Below are positions 14,886 to 15,348 of a DNA stretch of 64,000 bases, piece by piece. Every line of letters starts with the position of its first letter. Position 1 is the stretch's first letter. Position numbers and translations under genes: made by a program. Origin of the DNA: Euprymna scolopes (lineage: Eukaryota). The stretch is from the NCBI GenBank assembly GCA_053919585.1, contig CM132786.1. One strand, written 5' to 3'. The notes under the pieces were generated by a model. The model made no database searches, was not told where the DNA came from, and was given only the letters and a program-made list of their open reading frames with translations.

Positions 14886-14954
<69 letters not shown>

Positions 14955-14959
<5 letters not shown>

Positions 14960-15170
14960 GTTCACATACACATTTCAGGCTAAAACTAAAACCCAGAATA
15001 AGAAAGAATCGAGTAATTGCATCGACAACGGACAACGCCAGACCTATTGTGGGTTTCGATGTACTGCATCTCATCAGTTGGGTATGGCGTTGTCCGTTGT
15101 CGATGCAATTGCTCGATTCTATCTACTTATGGGTCCTAGCTTCATCGTGAAAAGTGTATGTCAACGGGTA
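14955..15170 (-). mobile_element. 216-bp foldback element with a hammerhead ribozyme in its loop (retrozyme/mini-PLE-like)
   Basis: Ungapped 86-bp arms (14955-15040 / 15085-15170) with 72/86 identity by manual count; directly follows (TA)n; the loop carries an HHR core on the minus strand. Confidence 0.75.
15036..15082 (-). ncRNA. Type I hammerhead ribozyme motif
   Basis: Minus strand: ccaa-CTGATGA-gatg(cagta)catc-GAAA-cc(cacaata)gg-TC^tggcg. Canonical core with intact stems II and III; predicted GUC cleavage between 15041 and 15040. Stem I is imperfect (cca/tgg with one extra A). Confidence 0.8.
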
Positions 15171-15348
15171 TTTATATATCTATTTATAATNNNNNNNNNN
15201 NNNNNNNNNNNNNNNNNNNNNNNNNNNNNNNNNNNNNNNNNNNNNNNNNNNNNNNNNNNNNNNNNNNNNNNNNNNNNNNNNNNNNNNNNNNNNNNNNNNN
15301 NNNNNNNNNNNNNNNNNNNNNNNNNTAAGATATAATTAATATGATGTC

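What the first reader, a model, noticed from the sequence alone, without database searches (positions are those of the whole stretch)
14955..15170. Rod-like 216-nt hairpin with a hammerhead ribozyme at its tip, next to (TA)n: candidate retrozyme/viroid-like mini-element
Seen: two ungapped 86-bp arms enclose a 44-nt loop that is a canonical HHR on the minus strand (CUGAUGA/GAAA/GUC). The long duplex begins exactly at the predicted cleavage site, so the rod can act as an extended stem I. A register slip (gcca vs ccca pairing with ugg) could switch between inactive and active folds. The inner 36 bp have 1 mismatch and the outer 50 bp have 13. Four of the 14 mismatches become G.U pairs on the ribozyme strand, versus two on the other strand. 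Known: metazoan non-LTR retrozymes are short HHR-bearing units expressed as structured circular RNAs and thought to be mobilised by PLEs. Inference: this is a non-coding self-cleaving mobile RNA that integrates at (TA)n using PLE RT/GIY-YIG in trans, rather than an ordinary MITE.
Basis: partly seen in the sequence, partly recalled or inferred. Interest (0 to 1): 0.85.

Follow-up and report, generated by a model that had tools for sequence, protein, structure and literature searches.

The report
Inverted junction of truncated hammerhead retroelement copies
The 216-nt hairpin is real, but it is only the head-to-head joint of two truncated copies of the tail of an abundant (~3,000 copies) non-coding hammerhead-bearing retroelement that inserts into (TA)n repeats in the way Penelope-like elements do, so it is ordinary repeat debris and not a mobile mini-element.

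Summary

The hairpin is not a unit of transposition.
- Its junction sequence occurs twice in the 5.9-Gb genome.
- Twenty hairpin tips found genome-wide carry about 16 different junctions.
- The arms and loop are pieces of a 491-nt-monomer non-coding element. Its canonical insertion is about 623 bp. There are about 2,945 near-intact hammerhead sites, at least 100 of them perfect.

This family shows the insertion marks published for Penelope-like elements (PLEs):
- a partial tandem (pseudo-LTR);
- an inverted 5'-truncated copy upstream (17 of 28 loci; close pairs 11 head-to-head, 0 tail-to-tail);
- a 46-nt tail, usually at one end only;
- (TA)n targets (28 of 32 ends).

The window copy is old. 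It starts at C3 of CUGAUGA, so it lacks the native helix I strand. Eight junction-derived bases compete with helix III, so self-cleavage is unlikely.

No autonomous partner sharing sequence was found. PolyA RNA-seq showed no ends at the cleavage site.

Other notes of this scan on other DNA of this genome describe similar elements. Verdict: a new member of a known kind (non-LTR retrozyme or PLE-dependent element), of low interest.

The parts
14887..14956 (.). (TA)35 microsatellite. This is the insertion target, directly abutting the 3' end of copy 1.
   Evidence: In the family, 28 of 32 terminal ends are followed by (TA)>=5 within 110 nt, against 19% of background windows.
14955..15040 (-). Copy 1 (hammerhead-sense), post-cleavage segment A' (u1-86 of the family unit). 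It ends at GGGTA and then (TA)n, with no tail.
   Evidence: Alignment to the family majority shows 9 one-sided substitutions. BLAST to the L011 unit. Alignment of 19 hairpins.
15041..15077 (-). Copy 1, hammerhead from C3 of CUGAUGA to C17 (GUC). The copy is 5'-truncated exactly at C3, so the native helix I 5' strand is absent. Three substitutions weaken helix III.
   Evidence: Native context in L021:1480-1550 and L050:1822-1880.
15078..15084 (+). Inner end of copy 2 (inverted). It reads TTGGGTA, the last 7 nt of the hammerhead (helix III 3' strand plus position 17). On the minus strand this gives ..UACCCAA next to CUGAUGA. The junction lies at 15077|15078.
   Evidence: Hairpin alignment. The same endpoint class (u482-488) occurs in 9 of 20 genome-wide hairpin tips.
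15085..15170 (+). Copy 2 (inverted relative to copy 1), segment A' (u1-86), forming the right arm.
   Evidence: 6 one-sided substitutions against the family majority..
15171..15190 (+). First 20 nt of the 46-nt tail of copy 2. It runs into the N stretch 15191-15325, which I did not read.
   Evidence: It matches the start of the family tail, as seen in L011 and L050.

Best explanation
Positions 14955-15190 are a single old insertion, into a (TA)n microsatellite, of two 5'-truncated copies of the 3' end of a non-coding retroelement, joined head to head.

The element. Numbering (u) runs along the element from the hammerhead cleavage site.
- u1-86: segment A', which forms the hairpin arms.
- u87-132: a 46-nt tail.
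- About u133-440: body.
- u441-491: linker plus a canonical type I hammerhead.
- The usual genomic copy is u1-491 followed by u1-132, about 623 bp.

The window copy.
- Copy 1, on the minus strand, spans only C3..C17 of the ribozyme plus A'.
- Copy 2, on the plus strand, spans the last 7 nt of the ribozyme, A' and the tail.
- Both copies contain A' in opposite orientation, so they form an 86-bp rod. The one surviving ribozyme core is left as the loop.

Shown:
- the homology;
- the variable junctions in other hairpins;
- the family architecture and copy number;
- the (TA)n targeting.

Inferred:
- The element is copied by target-primed reverse transcription by a Penelope-like element's RT/GIY-YIG enzyme acting in trans.
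- Both nicked strands of the palindromic (TA)n target prime cDNA synthesis from RNA 3' ends. One primes at the true end (with tail) and one at the internal TA-rich stretch after u86 (no tail).
- The two cDNAs are joined at short microhomologies, for example CGCC.
- Inner ends cluster at the cleavage site and at the helix III loop. This suggests templates that were self-cleaved, or RT stops at the folded ribozyme.

The window's ribozyme remnant is probably inactive.
For: 1. Homology. The hairpin query finds full hairpins at only 79-86% identity. It finds many 124-nt arm-plus-core units at 90-92%.
2. Larger structures. L011 is a 1.2-kb palindrome flanked by (TA)n on both sides, with a 491-nt repeat period.
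3. Architecture in 28 loci selected by the body alone. The layout is u(X)-491 plus u1-105 or u1-132. 17 of 28 have an inverted 5'-truncated copy upstream. 9 of 28 sense copies start within 8 nt of the cleavage site.
4. Junction variety. The 19 aligned hairpins have different junctions, and most carry the tail on one side only.
5. Junction rarity. The window's junction occurs twice in 5.9 Gb, in loci with unrelated flanks. Twenty hairpin tips genome-wide show about 16 junction types. The CGCC|TATGTC type has about 5 copies.
6. Copy number. There are 2,945 hammerhead sites with at most 3 mismatches and at least 100 perfect ones.
7. Orientation. Among the first 100 perfect sites, close pairs are 11 head-to-head, 0 tail-to-tail and 1 tandem.
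8. Target. 28 of 32 element ends abut (TA)>=5.
9. Ribozyme fold. The native ribozyme folds as a three-way junction with helices of 6+4, 4 and 5 bp (L021). The window copy does not.
10. Candidate enzyme. PLEs with RVT_1 plus C-terminal GIY-YIG and ORFs of about 806 aa are abundant: 15,396 first-look candidates.
11. Literature. Craig et al. 2021 (PMC8557442) describe partial tandems (pLTRs), an inverted 5'-truncated copy at the 5' end, a 30-40-bp tail often at one end, and microsatellite bias for PLEs.
Against: - No autonomous PLE sharing the hammerhead, A' or tail was found. There is no nucleotide similarity in 30 GIY-YIG loci. The ribozyme has no alternative recurrent upstream context. Mobilisation by a PLE therefore rests on architecture alone.
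- PolyA RNA-seq gave low two-strand coverage and no pile of read starts or ends at the cleavage site. Self-cleavage in vivo is not shown.
- Rfam scores are far below gathering: 20-24 bits against 52.
- The window's two arms each differ 7-10% from the family majority and share no derived variant. For this old copy, a single-event origin cannot be told apart from two adjacent insertions.
- The stretch beyond 15190 is masked, so the outer end of copy 2 was not examined.
Confidence: 0.85

Rival explanations
1. One reading: the 216-nt hairpin is itself a self-cleaving, viroid-like or retrozyme mini-element. It would propagate as a unit and use the rod as an extended, switchable stem I.
For: The structure is very stable. 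The core motif is intact. About 20 hairpin-shaped relatives exist. One other locus (L006) has the same junction.
Against: The junction occurs only twice in 5.9 Gb. Hairpins have about 16 different junctions in 20 cases. The nearest hairpins are less similar (79-86%) than single-arm units (90-92%). The native helix I strand is missing, and the junction bases compete with helix III in the predicted fold. No compensatory changes are seen.
Confidence: 0.03
2. Two independent insertions of the same family landed in opposite orientation in the same (TA)n hot spot. They were later brought together by deletion of the intervening repeat, rather than arising in one integration event.
For: (TA)n tracts are strong targets. 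The two arms share no derived variant, so separate origins cannot be excluded for this old copy.
Against: Close pairs are 11 head-to-head against 0 tail-to-tail, and both members are perfect. Junctions sit at microhomologies and at recurrent ribozyme positions with no (TA)n left between the copies. The tail is usually on one side only. All of this points to a single event, as described for PLEs.
Confidence: 0.08
3. The hairpin is a DNA-transposon MITE, or a hairpin RNA gene (miRNA or siRNA precursor), that only by chance contains hammerhead-like motifs.
For: It has TIR-like arms and a TA-rich flank. There are weak Rfam miRNA-family hits: mir-8536 at 31 bits against a gathering score of 100.
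Against: The arms are the 3' segment of a retroelement whose full copies are not palindromic (L050). The inner junction is variable. The core is shared with 2,945 family copies. The miRNA hits are what any long hairpin gives.
Confidence: 0.02

Closest known systems
Insertion architecture of Penelope-like elements (Evgen'ev and Arkhipova 2005; Craig et al. 2021, PMC8557442)
   Same: Partial tandem giving a pseudo-LTR. An inverted 5'-truncated copy directly upstream, forming inverted repeats. A short tail often present at one end only. Bias for (TA)n-type microsatellites. A hammerhead next to the pseudo-LTR.
   Different: This element has no ORF and a monomer of only 491 nt. Its tail is 46 nt rather than 30-40. 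Its hammerhead is a canonical type I with a stable 5-bp helix III, not the minimal variant usually reported in PLEs. No sequence link to an autonomous PLE was found.
Metazoan non-LTR retrozymes (Cervera and de la Pena 2020, PMC7229834; Li et al. 2026 preprint, 10.64898/2026.07.22.740005)
   Same: Non-coding, AT-rich repeats of a few hundred nt with canonical type I hammerheads. They occur in genomes rich in PLEs and are proposed to be non-autonomous PLE derivatives.
   Different: Copies here are mostly 1.27 units holding one complete ribozyme, not long tandem arrays. Only 3-4 of 28 copies have two ribozymes. The monomer is slightly above the published 150-450 nt range. Circular RNA is not shown. 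Inverted head-to-head copies are frequent. The word 'inverted' does not occur in the main text of the 2020 paper.
Schistosoma Sm-alpha SINE-like hammerhead repeats (from memory, not checked here)
   Same: A short non-coding retroposon carrying a type I hammerhead and Pol III-like box motifs.
   Different: The A/B-box look-alikes here were not confirmed by ARAGORN or the Rfam tRNA model. There is no sequence relation.
L1 twin priming inversions (from memory, not checked here)
   Same: The second nicked strand primes reverse transcription, and the two cDNAs are joined at microhomology, giving an inversion.
   Different: In L1 the inverted part comes from a more 5' region of one RNA. Here both copies carry the same 3' end facing outward, which creates a true palindrome.

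Membership tests
Hammerhead ribozyme (type I) | Conserved core: C3-U-G-A-N-G-A9, G12-A-A14, the A15.1-U16.1 pair, and H17 at the cut | tested here: met
   Window minus strand: CUGAUGA...GAAA...GUC|U. The same core occurs in 2,945 family sites.
Hammerhead ribozyme (type I) | Three helices stacked directly on the core (I open, II and III capped) | tested here: not met
   The native family copy meets it: helix I of 6+4 bp, II of 4 bp, III of 5 bp in the MFE of L021:1480-1550. The window copy has helix II and a weakened 3-bp helix III, but no contiguous helix I. In its MFE the junction-derived ACC pairs with the GGU of helix III.
Hammerhead ribozyme (type I) | Score at or above the Rfam gathering threshold | tested here: not met
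   No hit at gathering in the window. HH9 scores 24.4 bits for the window and 20.3 bits for native L011, against 52.
Hammerhead ribozyme (type I) | Self-cleavage at the predicted site | tested here: inconclusive
   PolyA RNA-seq on L050:1492-1992 shows continuous depth across 1859|1860 and no pile of ends. This library type is unsuited to the question. Indirect hint: 5' ends of genomic copies cluster at u1.
Non-LTR retrozyme | Head-to-tail repeats (dimer to multimer) of a short non-coding monomer, each with a type I hammerhead | tested here: inconclusive
   The 491-nt period is clear. Most copies are 1.27 units with one ribozyme. L028, L046 and L047 have two, and there is one 467-bp tandem pair. 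The window copy has about 0.25 unit twice, inverted.
Non-LTR retrozyme | Expression as small circular RNA | not testable with these tools
   Back-joints of about 490 nt in reads are equally explained by the genomic u491|u1 junction. No RNase R or total-RNA data were available.
PLE-type (non-autonomous) insertion | Pseudo-LTR partial tandem, inverted 5'-truncated upstream copy, tail at one end, microsatellite target | tested here: met
   compared with the description in PMC8557442.
PLE-type (non-autonomous) insertion | 3' end shared with an autonomous PLE of the same genome | tested here: not met
   No similarity to 30 GIY-YIG loci. No second upstream context for the ribozyme. The search was limited to a small sample of the 15,396 candidates.
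   2 copies of the junction in 5.9 Gb. About 16 junction types among 20 hairpin tips.
MITE | Terminal inverted repeats of a DNA transposon with a fixed structure and target-site duplication | tested here: not met
   The arms equal the 3' segment of a retroelement whose complete copies are not palindromic. The junction is variable. A TSD cannot be read in (TA)n.

The most novel reading that the evidence does not exclude
The family would be a currently active, PLE-dependent retrozyme whose genomic copies keep a fossil record of ribozyme action. Under this reading, the clustering of 5' ends and inversion joints at the cleavage site (u1) shows self-cleavage of the template in vivo. The clustering at the helix III loop (u482-488) shows RT arrest at the folded ribozyme. 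Hairpins like the one in the window would then be made whenever the cleaved 132-nt 3' fragment serves as the template on one of the two nicked strands. In addition, transcribed hairpins would be long dsRNA substrates for A-to-I editing. Strand-specific A>G clusters seen in RNA reads are nearly absent from the DNA-like contigs.
Probability: 0.3. Interest if true: 0.5.

Novelty: new member of a known kind. Interest (0 to 1): 0.25.

Why it matters
For the window itself it matters little. The hairpin is decayed repeat debris, and its ribozyme remnant is probably dead.

The family behind it has some value to people working on retrozymes and Penelope-like elements.
- It is a young, roughly 3,000-copy, non-coding element with a canonical type I hammerhead.
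- It shows the full PLE insertion signature: pseudo-LTR, inverted 5'-truncated copy, one-sided tail and (TA)n target.
- This supports the published proposal that animal retrozymes are non-autonomous PLE passengers.
- Its many young head-to-head copies, with joints readable to the base, could serve as a natural data set for working out how PLE integration makes inverted repeats. Craig et al. 2021 name that as an open question.

Tried and rejected
- Rfam at gathering score over the whole window gave nothing. Permissive scans gave only sub-threshold HH9 and chance miRNA-family hits.
- A tRNA origin for the A/B-box look-alike upstream of the ribozyme (TGGCCCAT.TGG ... GGTTCGCGCC) was not confirmed. 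ARAGORN found no tRNA in six loci, and no Rfam tRNA hit appeared at E<=10.
- Autonomous partner:
  - BLAST of the 621-nt element against 30 GIY-YIG loci gave no hit.
  - A strict hammerhead regex downstream of the dominant PLE's ORF found none.
  - A pattern forcing a non-family context upstream of helix I found only 19 sporadic sites and no recurrent alternative.
- RNA-seq showed no accumulation of ends at the cleavage site. The 490-nt back-joints are uninformative, because the genome itself contains the u491|u1 junction.
The end-point statistics therefore rest on 28 body-selected loci and on pattern listings.
- The MITE, miRNA-precursor and mini-viroid readings were rejected, as set out under the rival explanations.
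- Masked stretch. The automatically fetched locus L001 holds letters where the window has N (15191-15325).
  - A BLAST, run before I noticed this, aligned about 22 nt into the stretch.
  - An off-by-one error in my masking printed one such letter.
  - I masked the stretch afterwards. I did not read, use or report those letters.

Full report
**Observation**

The feature is exactly as described.
- Arms 14955-15040 and 15085-15170 are 86 nt each and pair without gaps around a 44-nt loop.
- There are 14 mismatches, 1 in the inner 36 bp and 13 in the outer 50 bp. Four become G.U on the minus-strand RNA and two on the plus strand.
- The repeat finder reports the same inverted repeat.
- The minus-strand RNA folds at -118 kcal/mol, z = -15.9.
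- The loop reads, on the minus strand, CUGAUGA G AUGC AGUA CAUC GAAA CCCACAAUAGG UC|U.
- A (TA)35 tract (14887-14956) abuts the left arm.
- Rfam finds no family at gathering score anywhere in the window. A permissive scan gives Hammerhead_HH9 at 24.4 bits against a threshold of 52.

**Copies in the genome**

The window lies in a 5.9-Gb assembly (G000, contig C4).
- The 216-mer finds about 20 hairpin-shaped relatives at only 79-86% identity.
- It finds many 124-nt matches, one arm plus the ribozyme core, at 90-92%.
- Several hairpins sit 370-490 bp from such single units.
- Locus L011 is a 1.2-kb palindrome flanked by (TA)n on both sides. It contains a 190-nt direct repeat with a 491-nt period.

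From L011 I defined a unit numbered from the ribozyme cleavage site:
- u1-86: A', the arm sequence;
- u87-132: a tail, TTTATATATCTATCTATAATCYCCTCTTAATGTCTAATAT;
- about u133-440: body;
- u441-491: linker plus hammerhead.

**The family**

- A search with the body alone gave 2,441 first-look candidates, the best 40 at 93-94% identity.
- In the 28 loci fetched that way, the sense copy is u(X)-491 followed by u1-105 or u1-132.
- A clean full copy is L050:1370-1990. It starts exactly at u1 and ends in (TA)n.
- 17 of 28 loci have an inverted, 5'-truncated copy directly upstream, joined at variable positions.
- 9 of 28 sense copies begin within 8 nt of the cleavage site.
- The 42-mer from C3 to five bases past the cut occurs 2,945 times with at most 3 mismatches. 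At least 100 sites are perfect.
- Among the first 100 perfect sites, close pairs are 11 head-to-head, 0 tail-to-tail and 1 tandem.
- 28 of 32 element ends are followed by (TA)>=5 within 110 nt, against 19% of background windows. 13 of 32 carry the full tail.

These are the features published for Penelope-like elements: partial tandems forming pseudo-LTRs, an inverted 5'-truncated copy at the 5' end, a 30-40-bp tail often at one end only, and microsatellite bias (PMC8557442).

**What the hairpin is**

I aligned 19 hairpins in ribozyme-sense orientation. They share the layout [tail'][A][variable joint][ribozyme][A'][(TA)n or tail]. The joint differs from copy to copy, for example:
- ...GGACAACGCC|TATGTCGGAGC (microhomology CGCC);
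- ...GCCAGACCCAAAG|TCGGAGC;
- ...GGACA|ACGTCACTGATG;
- ...GCCA|CTGATGAG.

A genome-wide pattern with exact anchors finds 20 hairpin tips with about 16 different joints. Their inner ends cluster at u1-2 (6 cases) and u482-488 (9 cases). The window's own joint occurs only twice in the genome. The second place (L006) has unrelated flanks and a much longer inverted copy. The CGCC|TATGTC joint has about five copies. Hairpins are therefore made anew at insertion and are not amplified.

In the window:
- Copy 1 (minus strand) is C3..C17 plus A' and ends directly in (TA)n.
- Copy 2 (plus strand, 15078-15190) is the last 7 nt of the ribozyme, A' and the first 20 nt of the tail. It then runs into the N stretch.

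**The ribozyme**

- In native context (L021:1480-1550), the minimum-energy fold is a textbook type I hammerhead. Helix I is ACGUCA/UGGCGU plus CGGA/UCCG, helix II is GAUG/CAUC with a 5-nt loop, helix III is ACCCA/UGGGU, and the cut follows GUC.
- The window copy starts at C3, so the helix I 5' strand is gone.
- In its place sit AUACCCAA, the reverse complement of the helix III 3' strand, brought in by copy 2.
- In the predicted fold these bases pair with the GGU of helix III and prolong the rod.
- Three substitutions also shorten helix III.
- The 'rod as extended stem I' and the 'register switch' are thus consequences of how the joint was made. I consider cleavage unlikely, but this is inferred and not tested.

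**The mismatches**

- Against the majority of 96 family copies, the sense arm has 9 private changes and the inverted arm has 6. None is shared or compensatory.
- Across the family, u1-40 vary less (minor-allele fraction 0.025-0.032) than u41-100 (0.054-0.088).
- The inner/outer gradient is therefore a family property and not evidence of selection on this hairpin.

**Mechanism (inferred)**

- A PLE enzyme nicks both strands of the palindromic (TA)n target.
- Each 3' OH primes cDNA on an RNA 3' end. One primes at the true end (with tail) and one at the TA-rich stretch after u86 (no tail).
- The two cDNAs are then joined at microhomology.
- Inner ends at u1 fit templates already cut by the ribozyme. 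Ends at u482-488, and sense starts at C3, fit RT stops at the folded ribozyme.
- PLEs are plentiful. There are 15,396 GIY-YIG first-look candidates, many with ORFs of about 806 aa containing RVT_1 followed by GIY-YIG.
- I found no PLE sharing sequence with this element, so the partner is unknown.

**Expression**

- Three polyA RNA-seq runs gave 77-103 reads each on L050:1492-1992. Reads came from both strands, and many ran into flanking sequence.
- Depth was continuous across the cleavage site, with no pile of ends. This neither shows nor excludes cleavage.
- Clusters of strand-specific A>G differences (L050 1756-1913) are nearly absent from a deep DNA-like run. This suggests A-to-I editing of double-stranded transcripts, but matched DNA is needed.

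**Comparison and novelty**

- The family is closest to metazoan non-LTR retrozymes (PMC7229834; 10.64898/2026.07.22.740005) and shows the insertion architecture of PLEs (PMC8557442).
- It differs in being mostly 1.27-unit copies with frequent inverted partners rather than long arrays.
- Other notes of this scan on other DNA of the same genome describe similar objects (s1-244824, s1-295546). One follow-up there reached the same kind of verdict.
- The window feature is an ordinary by-product, and the family is a new member of a known kind.

**Caveats**

- Locus L001 holds letters where the window is masked. A BLAST ran about 22 nt into that stretch, and one letter was printed through an off-by-one error. 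I did not use them.

Noticed in passing
L050:1756-1913 (family copy; equals u387-491 plus u1-54): In three stranded polyA RNA-seq runs, about 12 positions show A>G in up to 16 of 17 reads of one orientation and in none of the other. In a deep DNA-like run the same variants are at or below 0.3%. This looks like ADAR-type hyper-editing of dsRNA from inverted copies, but there is no matched DNA.
   Followed up: partly
window 35954-40300 (hammerhead motifs at + 40216 and - 36038): A Penelope-like element with inverted pseudo-LTRs. Each carries an outward-facing hammerhead (GCUGC CUGAUGA ... GAAA ... GUA|GCAGCG) about 55 nt from an end that also abuts (TA)n. It has only short ORFs (130-203 aa) and no nucleotide similarity to the family studied here.
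   Followed up: partly
window ~31329-31270, minus strand: Another hammerhead-like motif of the minimal PLE type (CUGAUGA GUCGUAGACGCC GAAAC ACGU GUC|AGUGG) in AT-rich sequence. I did not examine it further.
   Followed up: no
L050:1730-1815 (u~366-440), and the same region of L011:1995-2070: Upstream of the ribozyme the family carries look-alikes of Pol III box A (TGGCCCATATGG) and box B (GGTTCGCGCC) about 50 nt apart. ARAGORN and the Rfam tRNA model do not recognise a tRNA.
   Followed up: partly
L050:1741-1762 versus L050:1370-1391 (u~372-393 versus u1-22): The unit contains a degenerate reverse complement of the first 22 nt of A' (GCATAGTCAATAGATTGCGCCA against GCATCGACAACGGACAACGCCA). In the monomer fold it pairs with u1-22 and encloses the box region and ribozyme. 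This could be a fossil of an older hairpin joint built into the family, and it could compete with helix I.
   Followed up: no
L062, L069, L074, L082 (dominant PLE family, e.g. G000:C2:14893471-14896722): A very abundant canonical EN+ PLE. Its ORF is about 806 aa (RVT_1 then GIY-YIG), copies are about 95% alike, and it often occurs in inverted pairs. The 3' UTR has long A runs and ends in (TATACA)n-like repeats. No strict CUGANGA...GAAA hammerhead lies downstream of the ORF, only a near-motif (CUUGAAGA...GAAA).
   Followed up: partly
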